From IMG/VR virus record IMGVR_UViG_3300046003_007892, positions 1 to 64,000 of that record: 64,000 nucleotides of DNA; one strand, written 5' to 3'. Numbering within the stretch: the stretch's first letter is position 1; the number at the start of each line of letters is the position of its first letter. Below the pieces are notes generated by a model. The model was given only the letters and a program-made list of their open reading frames with translations, searched no databases and was not told the origin of the DNA. Below are positions 4,727 to 45,474 of the stretch, one piece after another. The position numbers and the translations under genes were made by a program.

Positions 4727-5464
4727 ATGCGCGAACACATCGACCTCGTTGATCAAGACTTCGAAGACCTCGTAGAGGCAGACCTGAGACGATTCCTGGC
4801 TGCGGCCGGTGCGGCAGGCTTGATCGCTGGCGGAGCCATCGCGGCTCATAAGGTCGGTGGAGACAAAGCCGAAGTTTCTCGGGATTGGACCGAAGACGAT
4901 ATGCCGATTTTCGGCGATGGGGATTGGGGTGGGCCCGAAGAAGAACAGGTCCGTCTGGCTCCTAGTCGCGGGGGCGCCCTGCATAGCGAATACACCGCCC
5001 GTGACACCGCCTATCTCGCAGCCACGATCTGGGGCGAGGCCCGGTCGGAAAAAGCTCTGGGGATGCGAGCCGTGGCACACGTGATCATGAACCGCGCCCG
5101 ATCACAGCGGTGGGGAAGCTCCCTTGAAGAGGTGGTCCGCCGCCGCAAGCAATTCTCGTGCTGGAACTCGAACGATGACAACCGCGCCAAGATCAACCGC
5201 ATGGCCCAGATTGATCGCTATCTAAAATCCCAGCCAGAGGGTTACGAGCGGTGGCTGGCAAAGTTCCAACGCAGCGACGAATATCCCGAGTATCTGTTGT
5301 GGCTCCAGGCCAAGAAAATCGCCCGTGACGTCGTGGCCGGAAACACCTCCGACATCACCGATGGCGCGCTCTTCTACCACACGACAGCGATCAACCCATA
5401 CTGGGCTCCGACCATGACACCCATCAAGACCATCGGGAACCACACCTTCCTCACCGACCGTTAA
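4727..5464 (+). CDS. Cell wall hydrolase, SleB/Hydrolase_2 family
   Basis: LAATIWGEARSE, VIMNR, QFSCWN, GALFYHT, IGNHTF motifs; start reassigned to ATG 5 nt after TAAATA. Confidence 0.85.
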   Translation: MREHIDLVDQDFEDLVEADLRRFLAAAGAAGLIAGGAIAAHKVGGDKAEVSRDWTEDDMPIFGDGDWGGPEEEQVRLAPSRGGALHSEYTARDTAYLAATIWGEARSEKALGMRAVAHVIMNRARSQRWGSSLEEVVRRRKQFSCWNSNDDNRAKINRMAQIDRYLKSQPEGYERWLAKFQRSDEYPEYLLWLQAKKIARDVVAGNTSDITDGALFYHTTAINPYWAPTMTPIKTIGNHTFLTDR

Positions 5465-5470
5465 AATGGT

Positions 5471-5498
5471 TTGACCAAACTGCTCGTCGTGGTAGTAG
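5471..5498 (+). promoter_or_regulatory. Sigma70-like early promoter
   Basis: TTGACC-N16-TAGTAG, 7 nt before ATG 5506. Confidence 0.5.
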
Positions 5499-5505
5499 CG
5501 CGGCC

Positions 5506-6507
5506 ATGAGCAAACTTCGAACAGGTGACGAACTTCGCCGCTTCCTAGCGGATGAATCCATCAAGACCATGATGGTGTTCGCCGATAGCTGGAAGCTCCT
5601 GCGCTACATGCAGGACGAGCTTGCGCCGCGCGTGGGGGACTACCTCGTCCGAGGTGGTCTAATCGTGGACATCAACACGTGGACTGTCGGGGTCTCGGAC
5701 CCGAACTGGCCGGTTGTGCGTCGCCACCCCGTGGCCGATTTCGCCAGCAAGACGGCCCGCAACCATTACGTCGATTCCCATCGTCCCAAGATCGAACTCG
5801 ACTTCGAGCGGCGGCATCAGGGTCGCAAGCTCTTCCTCGATTCCTTGGTCGCCGCCATGGATGAGCGAGCGCGAATGTGGTTCCGCGAGAGCCCCTCCGA
5901 GATCGTGCAGGACTGGCTCGGCCTCGACATGCACCCCGGCAAGCTGTCCGATTTTCAGGACTTCACGGGGGTGCGCTTGGATGCGTGGTATTTCCTCGGC
6001 ATTCTGACCCGCTGCCCCCAGCACACCGACGAGTTCATGAACTTCGTGCTCGGGCCGTTCGCGAGCAAGCTCAAAGCCATGGGTCTGGGTTTCGACGAGC
6101 GCAATCGTGCGTTCAACATCCACGGCTTCATGATGCTCTTGGAGGCGTTCGACATCGACTGCATCCCGTCAGGGGTGAAGCGGGAGTTCTACGAGACCCT
6201 ACTGAACCGGTTCAACGATGAGTGGGCGCGCGAATCCATGGCTGGCGACTTGGACGGTGGCGAGTCCGCAGCCCGTGTGGTCTTCTTCTCCATCCTGGCC
6301 GACGTGATCGAACCGACGCTGTCGGGCCCCTCGACATCCGAGATCGCCACCATCGTGGACACCATCATGGCCGCCAACCCAGACAAGGTCGCGCTGGCGC
6401 GTGATGACCAGCGCATCGTTGGTTGGTTCATCGGTCAGGTCAACAAGGCCTCCGAGACCAAGCTCGACGCCCACACCGTCCGCAACCTCATTCTCGAACG
6501 GCTCTGA
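5506..6507 (+). CDS. Protein with C-terminal GatB/YqeY domain
   Basis: C-term IVDTIMAANPDKV...IVGWFIGQVNKASETKLDAHTVRNLILERL matches GatB tail. Confidence 0.7.
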   Translation: MSKLRTGDELRRFLADESIKTMMVFADSWKLLRYMQDELAPRVGDYLVRGGLIVDINTWTVGVSDPNWPVVRRHPVADFASKTARNHYVDSHRPKIELDFERRHQGRKLFLDSLVAAMDERARMWFRESPSEIVQDWLGLDMHPGKLSDFQDFTGVRLDAWYFLGILTRCPQHTDEFMNFVLGPFASKLKAMGLGFDERNRAFNIHGFMMLLEAFDIDCIPSGVKREFYETLLNRFNDEWARESMAGDLDGGESAARVVFFSILADVIEPTLSGPSTSEIATIVDTIMAANPDKVALARDDQRIVGWFIGQVNKASETKLDAHTVRNLILERL

Positions 6508-6525
6508 CGCCAGAAACGACCCACC

Positions 6526-10190: not shown

Positions 10191-10667
10191 CTAAAGGCCA
10201 AAATGTTTCGGAAACAACGCGACAAGGTCTCGGGCCCAGTCCATGAGTTCTTGGTCGGAACCCCCAGCTTGCTGGGGCTCTAGCTTGACGATCTCTCCTC
10301 GATGCCCAATCCTCGGGTTGAGATGCGGAGCGATCTTGTTCGGACCCCACTCCGGGTCATTGAACTTTGATTGTGCGAACGCCTCCGGGTGAACACCGTT
10401 GATGTCTACGGCGAGACCAGCATCGTTGACGCACCAGATATGATCTACGTCACCATCCGGGCTCATCTCGGCATGGATGGGCCAGCCTGTTTTTTCATTT
10501 ACGGCCACGGCGAGGTAGCCGCATCCTCCGGTGCTGAAGGTTGAACGGACGAAGTTGTCGATGCCGTGCTCGGGCTTCCATTCGTCGTAGGTGGCCTCGT
10601 CGTCGCCATGGTCCATCCACGGTCGGGCGGCCTCCATGATCGAGCGCATATCGGGGAAACGAGCCAT
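10191..10667 (-). CDS. Putative virion-packaged papain/transglutaminase-fold protein
   Basis: TAAATA 4 nt before ATG; MRSIMEA; GGCGYLA, HIW, DING = Cys-His-Asp triad pattern. Confidence 0.55.
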   Translation of the reverse strand: MARFPDMRSIMEAARPWMDHGDDEATYDEWKPEHGIDNFVRSTFSTGGCGYLAVAVNEKTGWPIHAEMSPDGDVDHIWCVNDAGLAVDINGVHPEAFAQSKFNDPEWGPNKIAPHLNPRIGHRGEIVKLEPQQAGGSDQELMDWARDLVALFPKHFGL

Positions 10668-10671
10668 TCGA

Positions 10672-10677
10672 TATTTA
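10672..10677 (-). promoter_or_regulatory. Late promoter TAAATA
   Basis: 4 nt before ATG 10667. Confidence 0.6.
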
Positions 10678-11217: not shown

Positions 11218-11223
11218 TAAATA
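11218..11223 (+). promoter_or_regulatory. Late promoter TAAATA
   Basis: 4 nt before ATG 11228. Confidence 0.6.
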
Positions 11224-11227
11224 CCGG

Positions 11228-11386
11228 ATGAAGAAAGACGAATTCGAAAAGATTCGTGCGGAGGCGCATCGAAAGATCGCTGCCCGCAATGGCAACCTCA
11301 ACGAGGGGGCTGAAGAACCTGCGCCCAAGATGGTGGTCTTCGAGACCGTGGACGACTTGATGAAATCGTCTCGAAAGGGTTCGTGA
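11228..11386 (+). CDS. 52-aa antitoxin-like peptide
   Basis: MKKDEFEKIR...KMVVFETVDDLMKSS; C-term resembles DinJ/RelB tail; GTGA overlap with toxin-like gene. Confidence 0.5.
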   Translation: MKKDEFEKIRAEAHRKIAARNGNLNEGAEEPAPKMVVFETVDDLMKSSRKGS

Positions 11387-11988
11387 GATTTTCTGAGTTC
11401 GGCACCACCCGCATCCTGGCGTCAACCCGCTATCTGAAGAACGTCGCGTTTTTCCTGCGCGGCTACCCGACGATGGACAAGACCCTGACGGCCTTCCTGA
11501 AGGCCAAGGTCGCCAACCCAACGCAGCCCATGGGAGCCAAGGACACACCGTTCACGGGCGGCGTCCTGAAGGGTTTCTGGCACGTCCACCTCATCCACGG
11601 CAAAGTCGTCCTCGTCTACGACTACCGGAACGGAGCCCTGTGCCTCTACGACGTCGTCGAGCACAACGATTTCGAATCAGAGGTCAGGCAGCACAATCTG
11701 GCCAACTATATCGCGGCGGCCGATCTAGAACCCCTCGTCGGCGACGAGGATGAAACCGAGACAGGTCTCGCGCCTCGGGATACCAAAGAGATCGAAGAAC
11801 TTTTCTACATGATGGCCGTCGAAGAGCGCGACATCATCAACGCGGCGATTGCCGGAGACCCCGCAGACCTCATGGAGTTCGTCAAGCTCACCATCACTGC
11901 CGACGAGGCCACGTTCATGGCCGCCATGGGTGGACAGCAGGGTCTGGCGCAAGCTCTCCAGAAAGTCGTCAAGAGCCTCGGCTACTAG
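11383..11988 (+). CDS. RelE/YafQ-family mRNA interferase-like protein with acidic C-terminal extension
   Basis: KDTPFTGGVLKGFWHVHL...VVLVY...LYDVVEHND matches YafQ signature. Confidence 0.65.
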   Translation: MRFSEFGTTRILASTRYLKNVAFFLRGYPTMDKTLTAFLKAKVANPTQPMGAKDTPFTGGVLKGFWHVHLIHGKVVLVYDYRNGALCLYDVVEHNDFESEVRQHNLANYIAAADLEPLVGDEDETETGLAPRDTKEIEELFYMMAVEERDIINAAIAGDPADLMEFVKLTITADEATFMAAMGGQQGLAQALQKVVKSLGY

Positions 11989-12731: not shown

Positions 12732-12737
12732 TAAATA
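12732..12737 (+). promoter_or_regulatory. Late promoter TAAATA
   Basis: Upstream of the AAA+ ATPase gene. Confidence 0.5.
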
Positions 12738-12776
12738 TACCACTAACCCATTAAAGCGCAAGTGGAAAAAGCATTC

Positions 12777-14507
12777 ATGAAGATTTTTGAATTCGCACGC
12801 TCAGAAGACCGTGGCCTCGCAAACGTTCGGAAGCATTTTGTTGCAAAGATCGGCGAGCTTGACCGGATTGGCGGCCCCTCTCGCGTGTTTGAGATCGAAG
12901 GAACCGATCAACTCGGTGCTCTCTACTTGCACAAAGACGGTATCCTGGCCATCGGACTGGCTTGGGAAAAAGATCAACACCAGAACCTCGGCATTTCCAC
13001 CGTCTACGTCTGGCCCAAGTATGACCCCAATGACCCGGCTCCCTATGCTATCGATATTCCTCTTGACCTTTCCTTTGAACAGTATAAAGATGCGCTAGTC
13101 GATCTCGTTCGCCATCCACAACTTGGCGAAGTATTGATTTCCGGCAACAGCAAAAAGATCACCGAAATGGCCCGTCGCTCCACCGAGAGTGAATTCGTGC
13201 AGATGTGCGTCTCCATGTATGGCGACAAAGCCCGCGCACTTACGATGCCGGAGATGATGGCCTGCGCGGCTAAGAACGACGTCCAGATTCCCGGCAGCGT
13301 TCGCGGCAACGTCAACCTCAAGGTCGATGCTCACCACTGGAACCTCTCGGGTCGTGAAAACGCCGGGGACAGCGCGGACGCATCCTTCTCGAAGTCACAG
13401 GGCCCGCTGGAGCCCGCTCCCGAGATGGACCCGGATGTCGCCGCTCTGAAGACCGTGCAGGGCGTGGCCCGCATGACTTCGCAGGGCAAGGTCTACCTGT
13501 TCGGCCGCAAGCCCAACGGCGCCTTCTTCAAGATTCCCGGCATCGAGCACATCATTCCGCAGCTTGAACGCCTCCTGGCCCGCGCTCTGCCGGGCGGCAA
13601 CGAGCACTCCATGGACGAGCAATACGAAATGCTCGCCGACCGAGTGAACCTCGTCGCGGGTGGCGAAGCCTCCTTCATCAAATCCCTTCTGATCACCGGC
13701 GCCCCGTCGTCGGGCAAGACCTTCACGGTTCTGAAAACCATCAAGGCTCTCGGTCTCCAGGAAGGCCGCGACTTCATCATCAAGAAGGGTCGTATCACCA
13801 CCCTGGCCATGTATCGGACCCTGATCGAACAGGTGAACGGCATGGTGATCTTTGACGACTGCGACAGCGTCGTTGAGGACAAGAACGCGATCAACATGCT
13901 CAAGGGCGCGCTCGACACCGACCCGGTGCGCGAAATCTCCTACGACGTTCAGGGCACGGTCAACACCGCCGTCATGAGCGCGGAGGTCCGCAACGAATAC
14001 GTGAACGTCATGTCGCGCGTTCTGCGCGGTGAGCCCGAGGACGGCGATCTCGAACAGTTCGTCCGTAAGGTCATCAAGCCCAAGAAGGAGCCGAAGGATT
14101 TCGACGGACTCTGGGACCCCTACCAGCACGATTTGTCGGATGACGAACTCCTGGAGGAAGTCCAGAACTACATGGTCAACCACCTTCCGAACAAGATCGA
14201 CTTCAAGGGCCGCATCATCTTCATCTCCAACATGGCGGAAGAAGACTGGGACACCGCGATCATCTCGCGCGCCTTCTACATGAACATGGACTTCCGTTCG
14301 GATGAAATGATCGACTACATCGACAAGATCAAGCAGCACATCAAGACGCCGTCGCTGTCTGAGGAAGAGAAGCAAGAAGTCATGGACTACATCCGTGATC
14401 TCTACGTCACGGGCAAGCTGAAGCGCGACGTCAACTTCCGTCTCGTCCAGCAAGCCTTCGATCTTCGTCTGACTTCGAATTGGAAGAAGATGATCGCTAT
14501 GCTATAA
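12777..14507 (+). CDS. AAA+ ATPase with N-terminal extension
   Basis: Walker A GAPSSGKT, Walker B MVIFDDCD, FKGRIIFISN, ISR. Confidence 0.85.
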   Translation: MKIFEFARSEDRGLANVRKHFVAKIGELDRIGGPSRVFEIEGTDQLGALYLHKDGILAIGLAWEKDQHQNLGISTVYVWPKYDPNDPAPYAIDIPLDLSFEQYKDALVDLVRHPQLGEVLISGNSKKITEMARRSTESEFVQMCVSMYGDKARALTMPEMMACAAKNDVQIPGSVRGNVNLKVDAHHWNLSGRENAGDSADASFSKSQGPLEPAPEMDPDVAALKTVQGVARMTSQGKVYLFGRKPNGAFFKIPGIEHIIPQLERLLARALPGGNEHSMDEQYEMLADRVNLVAGGEASFIKSLLITGAPSSGKTFTVLKTIKALGLQEGRDFIIKKGRITTLAMYRTLIEQVNGMVIFDDCDSVVEDKNAINMLKGALDTDPVREISYDVQGTVNTAVMSAEVRNEYVNVMSRVLRGEPEDGDLEQFVRKVIKPKKEPKDFDGLWDPYQHDLSDDELLEEVQNYMVNHLPNKIDFKGRIIFISNMAEEDWDTAIISRAFYMNMDFRSDEMIDYIDKIKQHIKTPSLSEEEKQEVMDYIRDLYVTGKLKRDVNFRLVQQAFDLRLTSNWKKMIAML

Positions 14508-18087: not shown

Positions 18088-18536
18088 TCTACTTCCTCGA
18101 CTGCGAGTTCGACTCCTTTGGTGGTCGTCTCCTCTCAATAGCGTTGGTGCGCCAGGACGGCCTACCCCTCTCTCTGGTTATCTGGAAAGAGGGCGAGACC
18201 CTGACGCCGTGGGTGACCACAAACGTTGCCCCGCATTTCTATGCTGACCCGCACAGCCGTGAAGTCGAGCGCGCCGACGTCCCCAACGAGCTTGCCAAGT
18301 TTCTGCGTGGTGATTTCCAGCCCGTCATCGTTTCCGACTGGCCGGACGACATCCGGTATTTCTGCGAGTGCACGATGGTGGCGCCGGGGCAGATGATCGC
18401 CCTGAGCGACATCACTTTCCGAATGCTGAAGGTGCAGAGCTACCCGACGACCGTGCCGGGCGCAGTTCAGCACAATGCCTACTGGGACGCCATGGCGTTG
18501 CGGGAAGCCCTCGCTCCTGAGGGCGGCTGGGCTTAA
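18084..18536 (+). CDS. DEDDh 3'-5' exo(ribo)nuclease, Rv2179c-like
   Basis: FLDCEF...LLSIALV...DW..D...HNAYWDA. Confidence 0.8.
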   Translation: MIYFLDCEFDSFGGRLLSIALVRQDGLPLSLVIWKEGETLTPWVTTNVAPHFYADPHSREVERADVPNELAKFLRGDFQPVIVSDWPDDIRYFCECTMVAPGQMIALSDITFRMLKVQSYPTTVPGAVQHNAYWDAMALREALAPEGGWA

Positions 18537-18895
18537 ACGTTCTTCAGTCCGGGCGTCGGGCCGTTAACGGAACGGAACTCCGCGTCATCGGCAGGAATCG
18601 AGCCATCGGCATCGGTGTGAACGAGCATCAGGCGACGCATGACCTTCATCGTATCCTGCTGACCCATACGGACCAGCGACACGAAGGCTTTGCCCATCTG
18701 TTCGAGTTCCCAACGGTTGAGTTGCTCTTCGTTGTTCTGGACGATCTTGCGCCAACCACGCAGGAAATATTCCTCGTTGTCGATAGTGGGGAAGAACCCC
18801 ATTACGATACGGGCGTTGGTGGAGCTACGACCTTCGAGGGGCTCCCCCAGGACGTTGCCTTCAGCTTCGTTGATGATGTCGCGCATGGTCTTCAT
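18533..18895 (-). CDS. Putative internal head protein
   Basis: MKTMRDIINEAE; TAAATA 5 nt upstream. Confidence 0.6.
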   Translation of the reverse strand: MKTMRDIINEAEGNVLGEPLEGRSSTNARIVMGFFPTIDNEEYFLRGWRKIVQNNEEQLNRWELEQMGKAFVSLVRMGQQDTMKVMRRLMLVHTDADGSIPADDAEFRSVNGPTPGLKNV

Positions 18896-18900
18896 GAACA

Positions 18901-18916
18901 TATTTAGCGATAAATA
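18901..18916. promoter_or_regulatory. Back-to-back late promoters TATTTA-GCGA-TAAATA
   Basis: Each element 5 nt before an ATG (18895 minus, 18922 plus). Confidence 0.75.
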
Positions 18917-18921
18917 CCGAA

Positions 18922-19698
18922 ATGAAAACCTATGCCGATATCCTGGTCGAAAGCATCATGGGCACCACGCCCGAATACACGCCTCGCTACCGTGAGGTGC
19001 CAGTCTACGACAAAAACGGTACGCTGATCGGGTTCAACAATGTGACGCCGTTCTCGTCTCACGCCGCAGAGGTTTTGCGTCACAACGACATCGATTTCAC
19101 GAAACAGTATATGAACCAGGGTGGCACCCTGACCTATTTCAATCTTGGCCCGAACAACATCGCGACGTTCTCCCCTGACCTGGAAACCATCTCGCTGCTG
19201 ACGCGCCCGGATTCCTACCAGCCCCTGAACGAGATGGAGGCACCGGCCGATTTTGATAGCTGGTTCGGTGGCAGCGCAGCCACCGAGCCGAACGGTGCGC
19301 CGATGGTTTTCTATCACGGTGTCCCCCACGTCTACGCTGGCTTCGACCGGTTCTCCGATCATCCCATGGGCCATTTCTTCACCTCCGACCCCGACTACGC
19401 TCAGCGGTATGCGGAGAAGCCGATCAACGATGACGAAGAAGATGACACGGGTGCCATCTATCCCGTCTACCTCTCGCTCAAGAACCCGCTCGTCATTAAC
19501 CCTGAGGACAAGGACGGCGTTGGTGACTATTCCCATCACAAGCACACCGCCGAAGACATCCGGGCGGGCGGCTATGACGGGACGATGATTCGTTATGCGG
19601 ATGGTGAGGTCGAGGCCATGGTGATCGACGCGGACCAGATAGTCTCGGCCGTGTCCGCGCGCAAGCCCACCAACCCGTCTCCGATGTCGCGTGGTTGA
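18922..19698 (+). CDS. Putative virion-packaged ADP-ribosyltransferase-like protein (ART-PolyVal-like)
   Basis: MKTYADILVES N-term; VFYHG, FFTSDPDYAQRYA, YPVYLSLKNP, GYDG. Confidence 0.7.
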   Translation: MKTYADILVESIMGTTPEYTPRYREVPVYDKNGTLIGFNNVTPFSSHAAEVLRHNDIDFTKQYMNQGGTLTYFNLGPNNIATFSPDLETISLLTRPDSYQPLNEMEAPADFDSWFGGSAATEPNGAPMVFYHGVPHVYAGFDRFSDHPMGHFFTSDPDYAQRYAEKPINDDEEDDTGAIYPVYLSLKNPLVINPEDKDGVGDYSHHKHTAEDIRAGGYDGTMIRYADGEVEAMVIDADQIVSAVSARKPTNPSPMSRG

Positions 19699-19871: not shown

Positions 19872-20738
19872 CTATCCCGGACCTACGCCCAGCCGCCGTG
19901 CAAGTTCGACGGTGAACTTCTTGACCGCAACGCGGTATCTCTTGGGCGCGTGTTTCTTCAGGTCTCTGAAGAAATCAGGCGTAGTGAATGGTCCCAAATA
20001 GAACCCCTTTCGCTGCGATAGACCGCAATACTGCTTCACTGAACTAGACAGAGACGGTTTACGGCTGCCCTCACTGGCGAGGTCCCATAACTGCAAGAAC
20101 TCCTCAACGCAGGAACCGATAGTGGGGTCGAACTCAATGGGCGACGTGTGGTAGTCGGGGCCAAAATCGCTGTATTTCTTTTTTCTTTTTTCCTGATCAG
20201 CATGCTGGATGATCTCCGTCTGGACCATGTGCCGAAGCTCGTGGACGAGCGTCGAGGTGATTTCGTTCAGGGCATACTCAATGTCCTGAGCATGGGTGCG
20301 ATGCGTGGGATAGTCACGGAGGAACGGCGGAGCCAGCGGATAAAGGGACAGGACTTTCTTCTCGTCCTCCCATGAGCCCCTGAGACGTTCCTGGTCGGTC
20401 CAGTAAAGCAAAAGGGTGATACCCTTAACTTGTGGCGTGCGGCTGGTGTAGGACGCCCCCATGCCATCTGTGTCCATCGGGATGCGGTAGGCGGTCACGT
20501 TGCTGGACGGTTCGAACGGACTCTTGGTGACAACAACGCCGAACTCGTCACACAGGGCCTTCAGCGTAGCTTTTTGCTCAGCCACAACATCGGCCCGGTG
20601 GCTTCGTTTTCGGAGTTGGTCGCTCGCCCACCAGAGCATATCTCGGCGGAGAAGATGGGTGATTCGCGCGAGCATTTTGGGCGGAACCTCGACCAGCCCC
20701 TCCGTCAGCCGCATGGCGTTCATCTCGTCTATCCGCAT
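19872..20738 (-). CDS. Putative packaged zincin-like metalloprotein
   Basis: TLVHELRHMVQ (HExxH); TAAATA at 20743-20748, 4 nt before ATG. Confidence 0.6.
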   Translation of the reverse strand: MRIDEMNAMRLTEGLVEVPPKMLARITHLLRRDMLWWASDQLRKRSHRADVVAEQKATLKALCDEFGVVVTKSPFEPSSNVTAYRIPMDTDGMGASYTSRTPQVKGITLLLYWTDQERLRGSWEDEKKVLSLYPLAPPFLRDYPTHRTHAQDIEYALNEITSTLVHELRHMVQTEIIQHADQEKRKKKYSDFGPDYHTSPIEFDPTIGSCVEEFLQLWDLASEGSRKPSLSSSVKQYCGLSQRKGFYLGPFTTPDFFRDLKKHAPKRYRVAVKKFTVELARRLGVGPG

Positions 20739-20965
20739 CCCATATTTAGCTGTTGCTCGGGCCCTCGCTGCCTGATATCAGGGCCGGGCAACTAGGCGAG
20801 ATTTGTCGGTTGTGCCGCGCGTCGTGCCTCATGACGCGCAGGCCGTCGCCCGCTGACACATCTCGTCTGGGTGTCTCTTGAGCAGAGGGGAGGGTAGGCG
20901 TGCCCGTCGCGCCTGCCCTCCTACTCAAATATTGAGACGCCGTGCTGACTTCAGTATTATGACTG

Positions 20966-24255: not shown

Positions 24256-24396
24256 CACGGGCTCGCGGGCCTGTTAGGTTCGATGAGGTTGCCGCGAACC
24301 TGAATCGCGGCGTAGAGGAGGTAGCTGGGCGAGGCCTTGCTATGTCCAATGAGCGGGGCGGCTCGGCCGGGCTGCCCCACTCGACCTAAATATGAG

Positions 24397-28673: not shown

Positions 28674-28680
28674 CAGATAT

Positions 28681-30313: not shown

Positions 30314-30835
30314 TTAGCGCGCCCAACAGGCGTCCACGAAGGCAACGTCATCAGCCATCAAGGGTTTCTGGTCCTCGCCGAGCGGGATAGCTCGAACTTG
30401 AACGGGACCCATGAACCTCTGGACGGCAGCCGCGATCTTGGCGGTCATGGCTTCCAGGGGTTCGCCATACTGCTCCTGAACGGCCAGCCGAATGTCGTCA
30501 TCCGACATCCCCTCGTAGTCACCGTCCGTCATCCAAATCTCGCCGTAGCAATGCGTGCGGGACATCTGGAGCCGGTAGGCTTCGTTGTGGATGTCGAGAC
30601 CGGCGTGATCGCAAATGACGTCATGGGCAAGACAGCACCCGTCGCCGATGACGATCTGACCGTCTTTCATCAGAACGCCAGCGGCGCCCTGTGGATATCG
30701 GGCATTCCATTCCGCCTTGGTCGGCGCGAGGCAGATGACGGTCTTGCGATTATCACCGGGATTCAGGATTCGGTCCTGGTACACGATAGCCTCGCCAAGG
30801 ATACTCTCGACGATGATGTCAGCGTAGGTTTTCAT
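30314..30835 (-). CDS. Putative internal head protein
   Basis: MKTYADIIVES N-terminus, near-identical to that of 18922. Confidence 0.65.
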   Translation of the reverse strand: MKTYADIIVESILGEAIVYQDRILNPGDNRKTVICLAPTKAEWNARYPQGAAGVLMKDGQIVIGDGCCLAHDVICDHAGLDIHNEAYRLQMSRTHCYGEIWMTDGDYEGMSDDDIRLAVQEQYGEPLEAMTAKIAAAVQRFMGPVQVRAIPLGEDQKPLMADDVAFVDACWAR

Positions 30836-31692
30836 TTATTGGCCACGATGTGCTCGACGAAAGAAGTTATATGGGGCTTGAGCGGAGTCCCCAGTACCCA
30901 AGAAGCGAAGCAGTCGGCCCAGAACTCACCAAAGTTGTTTCTCGAATAGTCTCTCGGGAATGCGCCGGGGTCATTTTGAAGACACCAGTTGTATCGGTCG
31001 TTCAGGTGCACTCGGCAACCAGGGAAGCGGTACTCAAAACGATGGCCGAATTCGTGAATGATAGCGTGGATAAGGAACGGGTCGTTGGTGCTCGGCACAA
31101 GCCAAACATTATCTCCGGCGTAGTCGTAGTAACCGCCAACGCCGTGCCGGGTATGCTTGACACTAACGTCAACCGACATGAGCCAGCCCACCCCCTTGGC
31201 CTCCATGTAGCGACGCGCCGCATTGAAGCATCGCACCATCGCGTTTTTGTACGACTCGGAAATGCCATCACCATAGAAGATTATCTTAGTCTGACCAACG
31301 TCCACGGTCTCGACTTCTACGTTTGGGTCATTCGGGTCCAGGTCATTGAAGTAATCTGTGCCCTTAACGTATGGGAAGTTTACGGCCGGACGGTTCTTGC
31401 CTCCACGGCTCGTGATCTCGCGTCCCGCGCTATTCTGACCAGTGTTCTGACCAGTGTTCTGACCAACGTTGGAATAGTTTGAACCGCCATATTCTACGCC
31501 GTTGACAGTGACTGACCCCAACGCGCCGATAGATATGTTTACTCCGCCAACCTGGAACGATTGAACACTGCTTTCGCCACCAGTATGAGCGTATTCATTG
31601 AGGTGCTCGTCTGTGCAACAGCTACAACGAATTTCCGGTGCCTGGGACGTTTCGACGATGGCTAGGGATTTTCGTATATCGGAGTTGTCCAT
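30832..31692 (-). CDS. Putative packaged zinc metallopeptidase (lethal-factor-like fold)
   Basis: IIHEFGHRFE...YSRNNFGEFWADCF; TAAATA 31697-31702, 4 nt before ATG. Confidence 0.7.
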   Translation of the reverse strand: MDNSDIRKSLAIVETSQAPEIRCSCCTDEHLNEYAHTGGESSVQSFQVGGVNISIGALGSVTVNGVEYGGSNYSNVGQNTGQNTGQNSAGREITSRGGKNRPAVNFPYVKGTDYFNDLDPNDPNVEVETVDVGQTKIIFYGDGISESYKNAMVRCFNAARRYMEAKGVGWLMSVDVSVKHTRHGVGGYYDYAGDNVWLVPSTNDPFLIHAIIHEFGHRFEYRFPGCRVHLNDRYNWCLQNDPGAFPRDYSRNNFGEFWADCFASWVLGTPLKPHITSFVEHIVANK

Positions 31693-31696
31693 CCGA

Positions 31697-31723
31697 TATT
31701 TATCACGGCTTGGTGGCTAAATA
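31697..31723. promoter_or_regulatory. Divergent late promoters TAAATA
   Basis: Each 4 nt before ATG (31692 minus, 31728 plus). Confidence 0.7.
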
Positions 31724-31727
31724 TTCG

Positions 31728-32324
31728 ATGCGAGAGTTCCTCAACATCCTGGCCGAAAACAGAGCCCAACCCTTTCCTGGTCTCACCCCGGAGTTCCTCG
31801 CCAAGCTGCGCGAGATTCGACACCAGTGCCGCATCGACAACGGCGGGGGCGGGTCATGCCACCTCGTCTCGGAATGGCTCGATGACGAATACGGATGGGA
31901 CCGTGTCAGCGGCACCTACACGTCCGCCGACTATCAGGACGTCGCTATCACGGGCCACCTCTGGAACCTCTTGCCCGATAACAGCATACTCGATGCAACG
32001 GCCGATCAGACCGGCGAGGGGCACGACATCCGAGTCATCCACCCCTCTGACCCCGAGTACCATCGCTATCGCCCCGAGTGGTATCCAGATTTCCATCCCG
32101 ATCACGAGGATTTCGAGAAATTTTGGGCTGAATATCAGCCGCTCAGTTTCCCCCACTACGACGGGAGCAAATATCCGAAGTTTTCTGGCGAGGACGACTA
32201 CACGGGTCAGAACCGTCTGCGGGACGAGCGCGGTGACTATTGGTGGTCAACCGACAAGGAACAACTGGCTCGCTATCACGACGAGCAGCAGCGCGAATAC
32301 GATTGGAAGCGCGGACAGTTCTAG
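31728..32324 (+). CDS. Putative packaged papain/transglutaminase-fold protein
   Basis: MREFLNILAE; GGSCHLVSEWL, GHLWN, ILDATADQ triad pattern. Confidence 0.6.
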   Translation: MREFLNILAENRAQPFPGLTPEFLAKLREIRHQCRIDNGGGGSCHLVSEWLDDEYGWDRVSGTYTSADYQDVAITGHLWNLLPDNSILDATADQTGEGHDIRVIHPSDPEYHRYRPEWYPDFHPDHEDFEKFWAEYQPLSFPHYDGSKYPKFSGEDDYTGQNRLRDERGDYWWSTDKEQLARYHDEQQREYDWKRGQF

Positions 32325-35260: not shown

Positions 35261-35320
35261 GGGAGTCTCCATTTCACGACAGAGATACCACAAGTTGGTT
35301 TACCGTCAAGTAAATAGGGT

Positions 35321-35884
35321 ATGCGCTACTTCAACATCTTTGAATCAAAATCGGCTCCGCTCTACCACGGAACCGATCTCCTGTTGTTGGCTGCCATCGT
35401 GCAGGGGAACTTTCTCCACAAAGGCATCAACTGGGGGAGGCCTGGGGAACCCAACGGGCCTCGCCTGACCCGCAACTACGGCACGGCATACTCCTTTGCC
35501 AACGACAACGAGTTTGGCATGGGCGGGGTCCTAGTGCTCGACCAGATGAAGATCGCGCAGCGGTATCGCATTCAACCCTACGCCGACGTGGATGCCTCTG
35601 GAGAGCGTTGGGTTAACGAATTTGAAGAGGTGCCGATCACGAGTGAGATCGGCCCGCTGAATCGATATCTGATTTCGATCAATGCTGACCCGGCCCACAT
35701 CCAGACGGTGATGGCGGACGAAGACCTCATGGGGCACCGCTGCGCGGAAGCCAGCCATTGCATTTCGGAAACGTTCGCGACCTACGAGGAGTGCCACGAC
35801 GCCCTCGATCATCTCCTGAAACACCCGATGCTCAACCGGATGGTCCCGCGAGGCCGAGATACGCCGCTGGGTTGGCGGGTCTAA
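35321..35884 (+). CDS. Putative packaged ADP-ribosyltransferase-like protein
   Basis: MRYFNIFES; LYHGT, RLTR, EFEE; TAAATA 35311-35316, 4 nt before ATG. Confidence 0.6.
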   Translation: MRYFNIFESKSAPLYHGTDLLLLAAIVQGNFLHKGINWGRPGEPNGPRLTRNYGTAYSFANDNEFGMGGVLVLDQMKIAQRYRIQPYADVDASGERWVNEFEEVPITSEIGPLNRYLISINADPAHIQTVMADEDLMGHRCAEASHCISETFATYEECHDALDHLLKHPMLNRMVPRGRDTPLGWRV

Positions 35885-38583: not shown

Positions 38584-38620
38584 AAAAGAAAACGCCCCCG
38601 GTGAGAACCGAGGGCGTCTT
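38584..38620 (-). terminator. Intrinsic terminator
   Basis: ACGCCCTCGGT-TCTC-ACCGGGGGCGT-TTTCTTTT. Confidence 0.8.
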
Positions 38621-38642
38621 GATGTTCATCCGCTGGGATGCT

Positions 38643-39119
38643 TTAGGGTTTGCGACGGTCGTTGGGGTTACGGTCGAAGTACGGGCTCAAAGCCCCGTCA
38701 GTCGGCGAATACTTGTCGAAATCGAGATGGCCGTCACGACGATACCAAGGACCCATGGAGCAATAGTCCCAAATTTGGGCGGTGGTGTGATTTAGGTCCC
38801 TCGCCATGCCTTTGCACATGTCGAATTCTTGTCGTTGACTGTAACGGCTATTTCCGTCTTCGTCCGTTTCAAAGGCCCGCACCAGCCTGACGAAGTCCGG
38901 GTGGTTCTCGATGTCGGGCATGTAACGGCTGAAGTTGTAACGTTGACCCCAATCGTTGCTGTTGTCTTCGAAATCGTTTCTGAGCGTATCAGCCGAATTC
39001 GGAAACTGATCAGACTGCTTCTTCGTAGTCCGAATGCCAAAGACTTGGTCAGTGCCGAAACCCAAGAATTCGTTCAGCTTGGTTTCCGTGATGATGTTCA
39101 TATATTTGCGAATCGACAT
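38643..39119 (-). CDS. Putative internal head protein
   Basis: MSIRKYMNIITETKLNE; TAAATA 39145-39150. Confidence 0.65.
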   Translation of the reverse strand: MSIRKYMNIITETKLNEFLGFGTDQVFGIRTTKKQSDQFPNSADTLRNDFEDNSNDWGQRYNFSRYMPDIENHPDFVRLVRAFETDEDGNSRYSQRQEFDMCKGMARDLNHTTAQIWDYCSMGPWYRRDGHLDFDKYSPTDGALSPYFDRNPNDRRKP

Positions 39120-39213
39120 AGTCGTGGGCCCTCAAGTTTGATGTTATTTATCAAACTGCGTTCGCTGGCGTGCAAAGGGCGTGGGGACTAGATTTCCTGA
39201 CGCGGCCCCGAAC

Positions 39214-43668: not shown

Positions 43669-43674
43669 CACTCT

Positions 43675-43680
43675 TATTTA
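43675..43680 (-). promoter_or_regulatory. Late promoter TAAATA
   Basis: GCTAAATA, drives leader 2. Confidence 0.65.
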
Positions 43681-43703
43681 GCAAACTGGCTCGCGGCAGT
43701 CAA

Positions 43704-44216
43704 TTAAAAACGTCCAAAATCGTAATTTTCTTGCGATTTCATATATCTGGCTGCGCTGATGGCCTCTCTGGTGCCGGAATAGGTGTAGGTCCCCCGTCTG
43801 GTCACGAAGCTGAGTTGGCGTTCGAACGACGAGGGGTCGATGGTGTATTGCGGAATGATCATGACGTAGGGACAGACCTGGAAACCCACGCCAAGCATCA
43901 GGTTGTAGTCTCGCTTAAGTTCGGCCCCGAGTTCGTAGACCATGTTGCGAAGGATGTCGTAGTCGTATTCGGGCCGGTTCCGTCGCGGTCCAAGGAGATC
44001 GTAGTCGATGCTAAACCGGCAAGCGAGAGGTCTTGTGCACGCCTCGATGACTGAGCGGCGCACGTTCTTGACGGGCGCGGTCATGATGAAGTCGGCATGC
44101 GGGACGAGTTCGGGATAAACGTCGAGGACGCCGAGGGTGAGTTCGCGAGCCAGTTTGACCAGATAGGGGTCGTGGTTAGCGATTTGATCACAGTTCTGAA
44201 CTAGCTGGTGCTGCAT
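43704..44216 (-). CDS. Miniature T4 gp23/gp24-like capsid protein paralog (170 aa)
   Basis: IANHDPYLVKLAR; ELGAELKRD; CPY...IDPSSFERQLSFVTRRG recall gp23 N-arm, spine helix and C-terminus. Confidence 0.5.
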   Translation of the reverse strand: MQHQLVQNCDQIANHDPYLVKLARELTLGVLDVYPELVPHADFIMTAPVKNVRRSVIEACTRPLACRFSIDYDLLGPRRNRPEYDYDILRNMVYELGAELKRDYNLMLGVGFQVCPYVMIIPQYTIDPSSFERQLSFVTRRGTYTYSGTREAISAARYMKSQENYDFGRF

Positions 44217-44253
44217 CTGATAAGAATACCAGAGCGGCCATCGCGAACCCTAA

Positions 44254-45474
44254 TTATAGAGCAATGGCTCCATTGCGGTCGAACGCCTGAACGATGGTGA
44301 CCTCCATGGGCCCGCCTTTGAGAATGAACTCGTGCTCGTGGTTGAACGCGTTGTCGAGTTCCAGATAGTCGAGCCCGCAGATAATCTGATCGGGCTGAGC
44401 GGTGATCTGGAGGACGACGCCGAACTCACCATCGATCTCGGAATCCTTCCAACGGTTCTGGCTCATGATCTGGCCCATGAAGTTGTCGTCTCCGACGTTG
44501 GCGTTCCTGGCGAAACCATCGGCGACGTATTGCTCGGTCGTCCAGCTTGACGGCCGACCCCACGATATCGACAGCGTGTGGTTGCCCGTCTCGACAGCCT
44601 GCGCGAAATTGTTGTGCGCATCCGAGAAGAGCAGACCCCGATACAGGGTGATGGGCTGGGTCGGCCGAACCGGGAGGGCGAGGAGTTCGTCGATGTAGGA
44701 CTGATGGAGCGGCCACACCTTATTGTTCTTCGCCCATTTCACCACGGCGGTCTTGAGGATTTTCGTCAGTCGGGGCTGCCGGGCTTCCGTAAGGCTCTCG
44801 TCCAGATTTTCGTCGGGGTCATAGGAGATTTTCTCCGCCGTCCATGAGGCGAGCTTGGATTGGAAGATCACACCACGGGGTGCCGACAACCGGCTCGGGT
44901 CATGGAGGTCGTTGAACCAGACACCATCCACGCCCATGACGTCTTCGGCGTAGACGGTCAGGATGAGATCGAGGGGCGAGGTGTCGATGCGGGTCTGCAT
45001 GCAGCGATCTGCGAGTTTCTGGGTCCCGGTCATCCCCGTGGGGATTTCCTTGATGATGATGTCCTCGTTGTATTCGGGGTCCGACTCGGCCTCGGCCTCT
45101 TCGCGGGTATCGAAGACGAAGGCGACTCGGCCATCCATCTCCTCGTCATACCAGGAGACCTGATACTGGGCCTTGGCCTCCGCGTATCCGTTCTCGATTG
45201 CCCATTGCCGAATCTGCGCCTCTTGCCTCTTGCCCACCTTGTGGGCGTCGAGGAAGACGTTGCCGGGCTTGGTCATCTCATAGGTGTCGCCGCCCACGAA
45301 GCCCCGCGCGATTCTCCGCCATGCGTTGGGATGAAGGGAAACAGAGAGGCCCGCACCCTCGTAGGAATCCGCGCGCTTGTCAGTGGCCGTCATGGAGCCG
45401 ACGTGCCAGAGTTTACGGAACGTGCGGGTCTTCAGCGGGGCAGCGGTCTCGAAGAGGAAGGCGGCATAATCCAT
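44254..45474 (-). CDS. Putative packaged two-domain ADP-ribosyltransferase-like protein
   Basis: C-domain LYRG, SSWT, EHE (R-S-E clade); N-domain LWHVG..GLSVS; TAAATA 45479-45484, 4 nt before ATG. Confidence 0.7.
   Translation of the reverse strand: MDYAAFLFETAAPLKTRTFRKLWHVGSMTATDKRADSYEGAGLSVSLHPNAWRRIARGFVGGDTYEMTKPGNVFLDAHKVGKRQEAQIRQWAIENGYAEAKAQYQVSWYDEEMDGRVAFVFDTREEAEAESDPEYNEDIIIKEIPTGMTGTQKLADRCMQTRIDTSPLDLILTVYAEDVMGVDGVWFNDLHDPSRLSAPRGVIFQSKLASWTAEKISYDPDENLDESLTEARQPRLTKILKTAVVKWAKNNKVWPLHQSYIDELLALPVRPTQPITLYRGLLFSDAHNNFAQAVETGNHTLSISWGRPSSWTTEQYVADGFARNANVGDDNFMGQIMSQNRWKDSEIDGEFGVVLQITAQPDQIICGLDYLELDNAFNHEHEFILKGGPMEVTIVQAFDRNGAIAL

What the first reader, a model, noticed from the sequence alone, without database searches (positions are those of the whole stretch)
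4727..45474. Dispersed arsenal of ~15 late genes with T4 internal-protein-like N-termini
Seen: MKTYADILVES (18922), MKTYADIIVES (30835), MKTMRDIINE (18895), MRYFNIFES (35321), MREFLNILAE (31728), MRNLILLVE (24397), MSIRKYMNIITETKLNE (39119), MDYAAFLFE (45474), MRIDEMNAMRLTE (20738), MRYSEI (28461), MRFSEF (11383), MKIFEF (12777), MRSIME (in 10667), MDNSDIRKSLAIVE (31692), MREHIDLV..LVE (4727). Nearly all lie under TAAATA promoters. Known: T4 IPII/IPIII use MKTYQEFIAE as a capsid-targeting sequence cleaved after Glu by gp21. Inference: these are packaged and injected effectors (ART-like, HExxH, Cys-His-Asp, ParB-like, RelE-like, wall hydrolase) scattered as single-gene late islands among early genes.
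Basis: partly seen in the sequence, partly recalled or inferred. Interest (0 to 1): 0.72.

Follow-up and report, generated by a model that had tools for sequence, protein, structure and literature searches.

The report
Capsid-targeting leaders on megaphage cargo genes
A fragment of a giant lake-water phage holds dozens of unrelated small genes that all begin with a ~10-residue tag like phage T4's "pack me into the head" signal and sit directly on late promoters with no ribosome-binding leader, so its probable injected protein arsenal can be read from sequence.

Summary
All 15 N-terminal peptides are at the stated places. All 15 genes lie under a TAAATA box, directly or through an overlapping upstream gene. 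The window is the first 64 kb of a 240-kb, about 45% complete metagenomic contig of an Atu_ph07/Rak2-like megaphage. Contig-wide, about 45 mostly non-homologous genes start with M-[RK]-x-Phi-x-[DN]-Phi-Phi-x-E, with Glu at residues 8-10. This has the register of the T4 capsid targeting sequence MKTYQEFIAE and of the gp21 cleavage motif L/I-x-E. It occurs at 9.9% of N-termini against about 1% at internal Met. Selection acts on the peptide, not the DNA. In the cultured relative Atu_ph07, the same leader marks 19 of 140 proteins in the published virion proteome against 8 of 667 other genes (p = 8e-10). Those proteins include two encoded beside the gp21-like protease. This implies leaderless late mRNAs. 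Packaging, cleavage, injection and the transcription start are inferred for this phage, because its protease, capsid and late-sigma genes lie off the contig. I file it as a new variant of a known kind.

The parts
4716..5464 (+). TAAATA box (4716-4721), 5-nt spacer, and a gene starting at 4727 with MREHIDLVDQDFEDLVE. The product is a cell-wall hydrolase with a hydrophobic segment after the leader. Moderate member: Asp sits where Glu is expected, and the first hydrophobic-x-E ends at residue 17.
   Evidence: Pfam Hydrolase_2 at 4e-23
4258..4683 (-). Reference conventional late gene: a gp25-like baseplate wedge gene with a TAAATA box (4678-4683) 24 nt upstream. The baseplate wedge gene 911-4249 follows it.
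   Evidence: Pfam GPW_gp25 at 2e-7
10191..10677 (-). TAAATA box (10672-10677), 4-nt spacer, and a gene starting MARFPDMRSIME|A. Moderate member.
11218..11988 (+). Two-gene unit. TAAATA-N4-ATG at 11228 opens a 52-aa ORF (MKKDEFEK). The overlapping gene at 11383 has a GTG start and reads (M)RFSEF. Its G002 homologue starts MRFFEV. Weak to moderate member; the RelE-like call was not tested.
12732..14507 (+). TAAATA box 39 nt upstream of the gene at 12777 (MKIFEF, 576 aa). Weak member. It has an Atu_ph07 homologue that is not in the virion proteome.
18533..19698 (.). Back-to-back divergent pair sharing a 26-bp intergenic region that holds two opposed TAAATA boxes (18901-18906 on the minus strand, 18911-18916 on the plus strand), each 5 nt from its ATG. 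18895(-) starts MKTMRDIINE|A (120 aa). 18922(+) starts MKTYADILVE|S (258 aa) and is an ADP-ribosyltransferase.
   Evidence: Pfam ART-PolyVal at 3e-16; homologues keep the leader, as MKDYADFLVES and MRDLIDIISEA
19872..20748 (-). TAAATA-N4-ATG gene starting MRIDEMNAMRLTE|G (288 aa), with HExxH at residue 166.
   Evidence: weak PHROG 'virion structural protein' hit at 1e-6
24387..24825 (+). TAAATA-N4-ATG gene starting MRNLILLVE|Y (142 aa), with a ParB/sulfiredoxin-like cargo domain (DGCHR motif).
   Evidence: In alignment A1 six metagenomic homologues keep an MRxxIxLxE leader and the one bacterial (Vibrio) homologue lacks it. The public gene call of this protein starts 14 residues late.
27979..28683 (-). 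Two-gene unit. TAAATA-N4-ATG at 28673 (MKRYSVILAK, 71 aa) overlaps the gene at 28461 (MRYSEIAFKD, 160 aa, with LHHGT as in ART-like relatives).
   Evidence: The MRYSEI type recurs in G002 and Atu_ph07.
30314..31702 (-). Two-gene unit. TAAATA-N4-ATG at 31692 opens MDNSDIRKSLAIVE|T (286 aa, HExxH at residue 213). It overlaps the gene at 30835, MKTYADIIVE|S (173 aa, Cys-rich).
   Evidence: Compare Atu_ph07 gp205, MDFRQIRALLE|G, a virion protein.
31718..32324 (+). TAAATA-N4-ATG gene starting MREFLNILAE|N (198 aa). It is divergent from 31692, with a 35-bp intergenic region holding both boxes.
35307..35884 (+). CAAGTAAATA-N4-ATG gene starting MRYFNIFE|S (187 aa), with an ART-fold cargo whose LYHGT begins right after the leader.
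   Evidence: Atlas score 0.92 with all ten best hits in the ART clan, and structural matches that start at residues 7-10
38589..39150 (-). Single-gene unit. TAAATA box (39145-39150), 25-nt leader, a gene starting MSIRKYMNIITE|T (158 aa), and a strong terminator-like hairpin at 38620-38589.
   Evidence: The leader subtype matches Atu_ph07 virion proteins gp206 (MSIRKFLNIINES), gp33 and gp594.
44254..45484 (-). TAAATA-N4-ATG gene starting MDYAAFLFE|T (406 aa), with an ART-like C-terminal half (LYRG ... E). This is a lead only.

Best explanation
These genes encode head-packaged cargo proteins of an Atu_ph07/Rak2-like, T4-related megaphage. Each carries an N-terminal propeptide of 8-13 residues that works like the T4 capsid targeting sequence. 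The propeptide docks the protein into the scaffolding core of the prohead. It is then removed by the gp21-type prohead protease after a [L/I]-x-Glu site. The mature enzyme stays inside the DNA-filled head and is probably ejected into the next host cell. The cargo includes ADP-ribosyltransferases, putative zinc peptidases, a ParB-like protein, a wall hydrolase and many orphan proteins. Expression is late and comes from T4-type late promoters, [C/A]TAAATA. In this lineage the box lies only 4-5 nt from the ATG, so the mRNAs should start at or next to the start codon (leaderless) and be translated without a Shine-Dalgarno site. What is shown: the motif, its enrichment, peptide-level selection, its modular presence on unrelated cargo, the fixed promoter-to-ATG spacing and absence of SD, and virion association of the same leader in a cultured relative. 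What is inferred: packaging and cleavage in this phage, ejection, the effector roles, and the transcription start.
For: (1) Register. The T4 CTS is MKTYQEFIAE (PMC8442874). In it residues 4 and 7 direct targeting and residues 8 and 10 direct processing, and gp21 cleaves after L/I-x-E (PMC9026906). In 41 leaders here the Glu falls at residues 8-10 in 27, P3 is L or I in 36, and P1' is A, S or T in 25. Examples are MKTYADILVE|S and, outside the window, MKTYFEIVAE|S, which is 7/10 identical to T4.
(2) Enrichment. The strict pattern occurs at 9.9% of N-termini against about 1% at internal Met.
(3) Modularity. Among 42 leader proteins only 5 small paralogue groups exist beyond the leader. Homologues of the ParB-like and ART cargo in other metagenomic phages keep a leader, sometimes of the other subtype, and the one bacterial homologue lacks it.
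(4) Peptide-level selection. Arg2 uses 5 different codons, Glu uses GAA and GAG, and near-identical leaders differ at 2-5 synonymous sites.
(5) Virion association. In Atu_ph07 the strict pattern marks 19/140 proteins of the published virion proteome against 8/667 other genes, odds ratio 13, p = 7.6e-10. Further virion proteins with the second leader subtype are gp33, gp594 and gp206, plus gp205, and gp205 and gp206 are encoded directly after the gp21 homologue gp204.
(6) Protease and late sigma in the clade. Atu_ph07 gp204 matches T4 gp21 at 33% identity, E = 8e-15, and gp694 matches gp55. Both are also present in relative G002.
(7) Late promoter. The T4 late box TATAAATA spans -13 to -6 (PMC2988020). 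TAAATA here precedes gp25-like and gp15-like structural genes, and in Atu_ph07 it lies 20-32 nt before leader genes.
(8) Leaderless class. A fixed 4-5 nt spacing is seen in 39 genes, with SD sites in 0/39 against 86/204 other genes. The same class is present in G002.
(9) Predicted folds of the cargo begin right after the leader, at residues 5-11.
Against: There are no proteomic, N-terminal or RNA data for this phage, and no RNA run was listed. Its protease, scaffold, capsid, portal and gp55 genes are not on the 45%-complete contig, so their presence is inferred from relatives. The Atu_ph07 virions were only PEG-purified, and that list also contains RecA-like, SSB and RNR proteins, so abundant late proteins could contaminate it. 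Ten of the 19 hits there are paralogues (gp53-62). None of this contig's leader proteins has a BLAST homologue among the Atu_ph07 virion proteins, so the link rests on the signal alone. Cleavage after Glu has not been shown anywhere in this clade. Several listed members are weak (12777, 11383, 4727, 10667). With T4 geometry a 4-nt spacer puts +1 on the T of the ATG rather than the A, and the spacer is G+C-rich whereas the equivalent stretch in T4 is A+T-rich.
Confidence: 0.7

Rival explanations
1. The leader directs proteins to the virion, but to an external or tail structure such as the whiskers or hairs of Atu_ph07-like phages. It would be an N-terminal attachment motif rather than an internal-capsid targeting and cleavage signal.
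For: Atu_ph07 is a 'hairy' phage, and its ten roughly 30-kDa paralogues gp53-62, all starting M[RK]WxQL[TN]E, could be fibre proteins. Shared N-terminal anchor motifs are known for the Rak2 tail spikes (PMC3622015). The mass spectrometry cannot tell where in the virion a protein sits.
Against: The cargo includes ADP-ribosyltransferases and a ParB-like domain, which make little sense on the outside of a virion. The leader is only about 10 residues long and ends in the gp21-type [L/I]-x-E motif at a fixed position. Two leader proteins are encoded directly beside the prohead protease. 121Q/phAPEC6-type relatives show internal protein embedded in the DNA by bubblegram imaging (PMC7247149).
Confidence: 0.12
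2. The leader is an N-terminal tag for some other late-infection process, such as chaperonin delivery, a degradation signal, or membrane or compartment localisation. On this view its detection in Atu_ph07 virion preparations reflects abundance of late proteins rather than packaging.
For: The virions were only PEG-purified and contained obvious non-structural proteins. The phage encodes its own Cpn10. In T4 the gp23 N-terminus targets fusion proteins to GroEL (PMC3012670).
Against: About 70% of the strict-pattern genes in Atu_ph07 (19 of 27) are in the virion list, against an overall 17% (140 of 807), and many have 10-21 unique peptides and 40-65% coverage. The register match to the experimentally dissected T4 CTS is close.
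Confidence: 0.1
3. The shared N-termini are a by-product of nucleotide-level constraints on leaderless mRNAs or on the initially transcribed sequence of the late promoter. They would not be a protein signal.
For: The leader is strongly associated with TAAATA-N4/5-ATG, and codon 2 is usually CGN, AGA or AAR.
Against: Arg2 is encoded by five different codons, and similar leaders differ at synonymous sites. The conserved features reach to residue 10. The same peptides occur on genes with ordinary 20-32 nt leaders and SD sites in Atu_ph07 and in L249, and on contig genes with leaders (204821, 234755, 39119). Many tight-box genes, such as the gp15-like gene and the GIY-YIG endonucleases, lack the peptide.
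Confidence: 0.03
4. TAAATA-N4/5-ATG is not a promoter that gives leaderless mRNA. It would instead be an SD-independent translation-initiation or RNA-processing signal on transcripts that start further upstream.
For: There are no RNA data. The 4-nt spacing is 1 nt short of T4 geometry. The spacer is G+C-rich.
Against: Back-to-back divergent pairs have 26-35 bp intergenic regions that hold only the two boxes, which leaves no room for other promoters. The box equals the conserved core of the T4-family late promoter, and the clade encodes gp55 homologues. In Atu_ph07 the same box sits at promoter distance with a normal SD.
Confidence: 0.15

Closest known systems
T4 internal proteins IPI/IPII/IPIII and Alt with the capsid targeting sequence (CTS)
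   Same: Both have a propeptide of about 10 residues in the same register, with a hydrophobic or aromatic residue at 4, a hydrophobic residue at 7, and [ILV]-x-E at 8-10. Some leaders begin MKTY exactly as in T4. The cargo is diverse and non-homologous and includes ADP-ribosyltransferases, as Alt is. Both have a late TA(T)AAATA promoter, and a gp21-family protease is present in the clade.
   Different: T4 has a handful of such proteins, whereas this contig has about 45 in half a genome, roughly 10% of its genes. The dominant leader here is MR-x-Phi-x-D/N-Phi-Phi-x-E rather than MKTYQEFIAE, and there is a second subtype, MS-x-x-RK-Phi-x-N-I-Phi-x-E-S. The genes are dispersed rather than gathered in IP loci. 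The promoter abuts the ATG, so there is no 5' UTR and no SD. Cleavage and packaging are untested here.
Atu_ph07 (Polybotosvirus) virion proteins gp33, gp43, gp53-63, gp205, gp206, gp381, gp408, gp482, gp548, gp561, gp594, gp672
   Same: The same two leader subtypes occur on many unrelated proteins. These proteins were experimentally found in virions. A T4-like head module with a gp21 homologue is present. The baseplate wedge protein is about 40% identical to that of this contig.
   Different: The leader was not noted in the papers I could search. The Atu_ph07 genes have ordinary 20-32 nt leaders with SD sites. The cargo proteins show no detectable homology to those of this contig.
phiKZ / 201phi2-1 / SPN3US inner-body and ejection proteins processed by a gp21-like protease
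   Same: Many head-internal proteins are matured by cleavage after Glu at a short motif, and they are thought to be ejected into the host.
   Different: The cleavage motif there is S/A-x-E. Their propeptides are long and often cut at several sites, with no short universal leader. They belong to a different phage lineage with a phage nucleus and virion RNA polymerase.
Polyvalent proteins of phages and conjugative elements (ART-PolyVal and related domains)
   Same: They share the domain repertoire (ART-PolyVal in 18922 and in the outside-window gene starting at contig 86195) and the presumed delivery together with the DNA.
   Different: In polyvalent proteins the domains are fused into one giant protein. 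Here each domain is a separate small protein with its own targeting leader and its own promoter.
Leaderless mRNAs (lambda cI from PRM; common in Caulobacter, actinobacteria and archaea)
   Same: The promoter -10 element sits immediately before the start codon and there is no SD.
   Different: Here a T4-type gp55-class late promoter appears to drive a whole late regulon of leaderless genes. I found no report of this for T4-related phages.

Membership tests
T4-type CTS-bearing internal head proteins | N-terminal propeptide of about 10 residues with hydrophobic residues at positions 4 and 7 and L/I-x-E ending at about position 10 | tested here: met
   In 41 leaders the Glu falls at residues 8-10 in 27, P3 is L or I in 36, and P1' is A, S or T in 25. 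T4 reference.
T4-type CTS-bearing internal head proteins | The same leader occurs on otherwise unrelated cargo proteins (a portable signal) | tested here: met
   All-against-all BLAST without the leader finds only 5 small paralogue groups among 42 proteins. Homologous cargo carries different leader subtypes, and the bacterial homologue has no leader.
T4-type CTS-bearing internal head proteins | A gp21-family prohead protease is encoded by the phage | tested here: inconclusive
   None was found on this 45%-complete contig. It is present in relatives G002 (55% identity to Atu_ph07 gp204) and Atu_ph07 (33% identity to T4 gp21).
T4-type CTS-bearing internal head proteins | The protein is present in purified virions | not testable with these tools
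   There are no data for this phage. In Atu_ph07, 19/140 virion proteins against 8/667 other genes carry the strict leader.
T4-type CTS-bearing internal head proteins | The propeptide is removed after Glu during head maturation | not testable with these tools
   No N-terminal or semi-tryptic peptide data are available for any member of this clade.
T4-type CTS-bearing internal head proteins | The protein is ejected into the host with the DNA | not testable with these tools
   This is inference only.
T4-family late genes (gp55-dependent promoter) | A TATAAATA-like box at -13 to -6 with no -35 element | tested here: met
   [C/A/G]TAAATA precedes all 15 genes directly or through an operon. The same box precedes the gp25-like and gp15-like structural genes. 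T4 geometry.
T4-family late genes (gp55-dependent promoter) | A gp55-type late sigma factor is encoded | tested here: inconclusive
   It is not on the contig. A homologue is present in G002 (39% identity) and in Atu_ph07 as gp694.
Leaderless mRNA genes | The transcription start coincides with the start codon, and there is no SD | tested here: inconclusive
   The spacing of 4-5 nt and SD sites in 0/39 genes fit this. The transcription start could not be measured because no RNA run was listed.
Polyvalent proteins | A very large multidomain polypeptide that combines several effector domains | tested here: not met
   The leader proteins are 101-576 aa long and at most one or two domains each.

The most novel reading that the evidence does not exclude
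A short capsid-targeting code that can be recognised from sequence is conserved from T4 to half-megabase megaphages. In this lineage it has expanded so that about one gene in ten encodes head-packaged cargo. Each cargo gene is a compact cassette of late promoter, start codon and leader, transcribed as a leaderless mRNA. That would make late gene expression in a T4-related phage largely independent of Shine-Dalgarno sites. It would also allow the injected proteome of uncultured megaphages to be predicted from DNA alone.
Probability: 0.45. Interest if true: 0.8.

Novelty: new variant of a known kind. Interest (0 to 1): 0.62.

Why it matters
If this is right, the T4 capsid targeting sequence is not a T-even curiosity. 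It would be an ancient rule shared by the whole gp21/gp23 lineage, including 0.25-0.6 Mb megaphages. The probable injected proteins of uncultured giant phages could then be listed from sequence alone, about 45 here, and most are orphans that are good candidates for host-takeover or anti-defence functions. It would also explain, after the fact, about 30 unannotated proteins in the published Atu_ph07 virion proteome. It would offer natural targeting tags for loading cargo into phages that infect non-E. coli hosts. The promoter-on-the-ATG architecture would be the first leaderless late regulon in a T4-related phage that I could find. It has a practical consequence too: standard gene callers truncate these genes. 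The public call of the 24397 product starts 14 residues late and so hides the leader.

Tried and rejected
- Megablast of two window segments against 50,697 phage records gave no match.
- Pfam Peptidase_S77 and Gp23 searches of the contig gave nothing usable.
- tblastn with the Atu_ph07 portal, protease, scaffold, capsid and gp55-like proteins against the contig gave no hits, so the head and late-sigma genes lie on the missing half.
- I looked for the missing half among 80 IMG/VR head-module loci. None has about 58% G+C or comes from the same samples.
- RNA-seq: 19 DNA runs from lake water hold the sequence, but no RNA run was listed. Read laying was therefore not used and the transcription start is unmeasured.
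- PHROGs and Pfam left 13 of the 15 window proteins without a family-level assignment; there were a few sub-threshold hits.
- BLAST of the contig's leader proteins against the Atu_ph07 virion proteins found no homologues.
- In phAPEC6, a Rak2-like coliphage, only about 3 virion proteins (gp162, gp182, gp228) have a convincing leader, so the expansion is specific to the Atu_ph07-like branch.
- The nucleotide-constraint explanation was rejected.
- No structure prediction or complex prediction was run. A short peptide against a protease would not have given a usable verdict.
- Sigma-70-like promoter and terminator scans were not significantly above shuffles overall and were used only as hints.

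Full report
WHAT THE WINDOW IS. The window is the first 64 kb of a single 240,363-bp contig with 58% G+C. The contig is an IMG/VR viral record with no terminal repeats, and CheckV estimates it as 45% complete. Near-identical sequence is held by several lake-water metagenomes. Its 1,112-aa baseplate wedge protein (911-4249, minus strand) is 40-43% identical to those of the Agrobacterium megaphage Atu_ph07 and of Sinorhizobium phage Phosso, and 36% identical to those of the Rak2-like jumbo phages. The phage therefore belongs to the T4-related gp20/gp21/gp23 lineage of giant myoviruses. No close relative is in the phage collection at the DNA level.

THE OBSERVATION. Two small corrections apply. 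MRSIME is residues 7-12 of the ORF that starts at 10667, and MRFSEF begins with GTG. All 15 genes are under a TAAATA box. Ten have it 4-5 nt from the ATG. Two have it 25 nt (39119) and 39 nt (12777) upstream. Three (30835, 28461, 11383) overlap the stop codon of a co-oriented upstream gene that has a tight box.

THE PROMOTER-TO-START SPACING. TAAATA-N4-ATG occurs 10 times in the window against 0.04 expected from shuffles. Contig-wide, 32 of the 90 TAAATA boxes lie exactly 4 nt, and 7 exactly 5 nt, before the start of an ORF. None of the 39 tight-box genes has a Shine-Dalgarno core at a usable distance. By comparison 86 of 204 other confident genes do, and so do 8.8% of random positions.

THE PEPTIDE MOTIF IS REAL. 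I defined the gene set by the DNA box alone and then compared N-termini. Residue 2 is Arg or Lys in 28 of 39. [IL]-x-E within residues 3-16 occurs in 30/39 against 54/326 other genes and 11% of interior windows (p = 3e-14). A strict pattern occurs in 19/39 against 15/326 (p = 2e-12), and most of those 15 are plainly further members, such as MKTYFEIVAES, MREIIDIVEQS and MRHLITLAESV. At internal Met the strict pattern occurs at 1.1%. Over the whole contig 36 of 365 called genes (9.9%) match, and with looser members I count about 45. Across 41 leaders the Glu sits at residues 8-10 in 27, the P3 residue is Leu or Ile in 36, and the residue after Glu is Ala, Ser or Thr in 25.

THE LEADER IS A PROTEIN SIGNAL, NOT A DNA ARTEFACT OR A GENE FAMILY. 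With the first 18 residues removed, only five small paralogue groups remain among 42 leader proteins. Arg2 is encoded by CGC, AGA, CGA, CGT and CGG, and Glu by GAA and GAG. Leaders that share 7-9 of 10 residues differ at 2-5 synonymous positions. Six metagenomic homologues of the ParB-like protein (24397) all begin MR-x-x-I-x-L-x-E, followed by a linker of variable length, while the one bacterial homologue (Vibrio) has no leader. The closest homologue of the ART protein 18922 begins MKDYADFLVES. A more distant homologue with the same ART domain begins MRDLIDIISEA, so the two leader flavours are interchangeable on homologous cargo. Another 58% G+C metagenomic contig has two tandem leader genes behind a TAAATA box with an ordinary 26-nt leader.

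COMPARISON WITH T4. The T4 CTS is MKTYQEFIAE, and it is cleaved once from the internal proteins (PMC8442874). Mutational work placed targeting at residues 4 and 7 and processing at residues 8 and 10, and gp21 cleaves after L/I-x-E (PMC9026906). T-even internal proteins are diverse defence-related proteins that share only the CTS (PMC3012670). The leaders here have the same register. MKTYADILVE|S, MRTYIDILME|S and MREFLNILAE|N are examples. MKTYFEIVAE|S, which starts at contig position 154803, is 7/10 identical to the T4 sequence.

THE TEST IN A CULTURED RELATIVE. I fetched the whole Atu_ph07 genome. I then matched the published virion proteome (Attai et al. 2018, Supplementary Table S5) to ORFs by molecular weight. 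The list is full of the same leaders. gp53-62 begin M[RK]WxQL[TN]E. Others are gp43 (MRLIDLLESS), gp63, gp381, gp408, gp482, gp548, gp561 and gp672. A second subtype appears on gp33 (MSSDLRKYKNILSES), gp594 and gp206 (MSIRKFLNIINES; compare window 39119, MSIRKYMNIITET), and gp205 begins MDFRQIRALLEG (compare window 31692). gp205 and gp206 are encoded directly after gp204, the gp21 homologue, which is 33% identical to T4 gp21 at E = 8e-15. The strict pattern marks 19 of 140 listed virion proteins against 8 of 667 other called genes (odds ratio 13, p = 7.6e-10). There are caveats. Ten of the 19 are paralogues. The virions were only PEG-purified. The list also contains a few clearly non-structural proteins. 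The cargo proteins of Atu_ph07 and of this contig share no detectable homology, which is what one would expect from a fast-turning-over arsenal, but it means the link rests on the signal alone. In the Rak2-like coliphage phAPEC6 only about three virion proteins carry a convincing leader. N-terminal strict-pattern frequencies are 9.9% (this contig), 5.2% (G002), 3.9% (Atu_ph07) and 2.9% (phAPEC6), over a background of about 1% in all four.

THE PROMOTER. The T4 late promoter is an 8-bp box, TATAAATA, at -13 to -6 with no -35 element, and variants at -13/-12 are known in relatives (PMC2988020). On this contig [C/A/G]TAAATA precedes the gp25-like baseplate gene with a 24-nt leader, and the gp15-like tail sheath stabiliser with a 4-nt spacer. 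In Atu_ph07 the box lies 20-32 nt before leader genes, with normal SD sites, and there is no N4 class. Atu_ph07 and G002 both encode a gp55 homologue.

THE LEADERLESS CLASS IN RELATIVES. G002 is a CheckV-complete 608-kb relative whose baseplate protein is 54% identical to that of this contig. It has the same tight class, with 28 boxes at N4 and 36 at N5 out of 210. It also has a full T4-like head module: portal, protease, scaffold, and a capsid protein 69% identical to that of Atu_ph07. A still closer relative by baseplate identity, G001, lacks the ATG-Arg form of the pattern that I searched for. With T4 geometry a 5-nt spacer puts the A of the ATG at +1, and a 4-nt spacer puts it at -1. This is the arrangement expected for leaderless mRNAs. 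Divergent pairs such as 18895/18922 (26-bp intergenic region) and 31692/31728 (35 bp) contain nothing but the two opposed boxes. I could not measure the transcription start, because no RNA run was listed.

THE CARGO.
- Pfam confirms ART-PolyVal in 18922 and, outside the window, in the gene starting at contig 86195. The gene at 86729 has a weak hit.
- Pfam confirms a cell-wall hydrolase (Hydrolase_2) in 4727.
- HExxH is present in 20738 and 31692.
- Language-model and structure look-ups give an ART fold for 35321 (score 0.92), an ART-like lead for 45474 (below 0.9, so a lead only) and a ParB/sulfiredoxin-like fold for 24397 (score 0.96, TM 0.5-0.6).
- In all three of those look-ups the structural matches begin at residues 5-11, directly after the leader.
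- The RelE-like and Cys-His-Asp proposals were not tested.
- The remaining proteins are orphans.

NEIGHBOURHOOD. Genes between the leader genes include SIR2, Cpn10 and an NAD salvage set. Some of them are preceded by sigma-70-like TTGACA-type matches. This fits a mosaic of early and late transcription units but does not prove it.

VERDICT. The best explanation, which I hold at about 0.7, is a T4-type capsid-targeting and cleavage leader on a greatly expanded set of head-packaged cargo proteins, expressed from late promoters that in this lineage abut the start codon. The rivals are:
- an external virion attachment motif (0.12);
- another late-stage tag combined with contamination of the proteome (0.10);
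- a nucleotide-level artefact (0.03, effectively refuted);
- for the leaderless part, a translation or RNA-processing signal rather than a promoter (0.15).
I found no paper that links a capsid targeting sequence to Rak2-like or Atu_ph07-like phages, and none that describes leaderless T4-type late promoters. The library does not cover everything. I classify the finding as a new variant of a known kind.

Noticed in passing
window 26644-27291 and 40741-43262 (minus strand): There are two tRNA arrays with 16 genes in all. The first holds Arg-CCG, Gln x2, Asp x2 and Arg-ACG x2. The second holds Asn, Met, Val x2, Ile x2, Phe, Tyr and Trp. The three Arg tRNAs are notable because Arg is the dominant second residue of the leaders.
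   Followed up: partly
window 23523-23532 and 35307-35316; eight more sites on the contig (e.g. 64070, 69397, 70142, 84431): A longer conserved motif, (A)CTTGTCAAGTAAATA, occurs 10 times, 9 of them on the plus strand, often with ATAGAC about 20 nt upstream. It contains the palindrome CTTG-T-CAAG fused to the TAAATA box. It may mark a second, regulated promoter class.
   Followed up: partly
window 16741-17729 and 47753-54852: The phage encodes Cpn10 (GroES), a SIR2-family protein and an NAD salvage set: a NUDIX plus cytidylyltransferase-like protein, an NAPRTase, and a NadR-like AAA_28 protein. This is striking next to several NAD-consuming ADP-ribosyltransferase cargo genes.
   Followed up: partly
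window 24397-24825: The public gene call for this protein (P0001, 128 aa) starts 14 residues downstream of the conserved leader. Standard gene callers that rely on SD sites therefore appear to truncate the tight-box genes and hide the leader in databases.
   Followed up: partly
window 18896-18921 and 31693-31727: These are divergent gene pairs whose whole intergenic region (26 and 35 bp) consists of two opposed TAAATA boxes, each 4-5 nt from its ATG. A third such pair lies at contig 86706/86729.
   Followed up: yes
contig 64185 (+) and 112223 (-), outside the window: GIY-YIG / T5orf172 homing-endonuclease-like genes also sit on TAAATA-N4 starts, one of them with a GTG start. The gp15-like tail gene at 168649 does too. 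The tight promoter class is therefore not restricted to leader-bearing cargo.
   Followed up: partly
L039 (IMGVR_UViG_3300042892_004737, 79 kb): A second assembly of the same phage has a baseplate gene 100% identical to that of the window. It overlaps the window and should extend about 13 kb beyond the window's left end. It could help to complete the genome.
   Followed up: no
window 12467-12479 (minus strand): A further TAAATA-N4-ATG opens a 53-aa ORF (MRNTDPPIPP...) that my gene caller did not call. It may be a small late gene or an antisense start.
   Followed up: no
Atu_ph07 record, gp213 (170454+) and gp200 (162443+): Two more Atu_ph07 virion proteins in the head-gene cluster have longer N-terminal stretches that end in hydrophobic-x-E: MKSELHKALTLLINE and MTKKIEKIINHIINEE. 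This suggests that longer propeptide variants exist.
   Followed up: no
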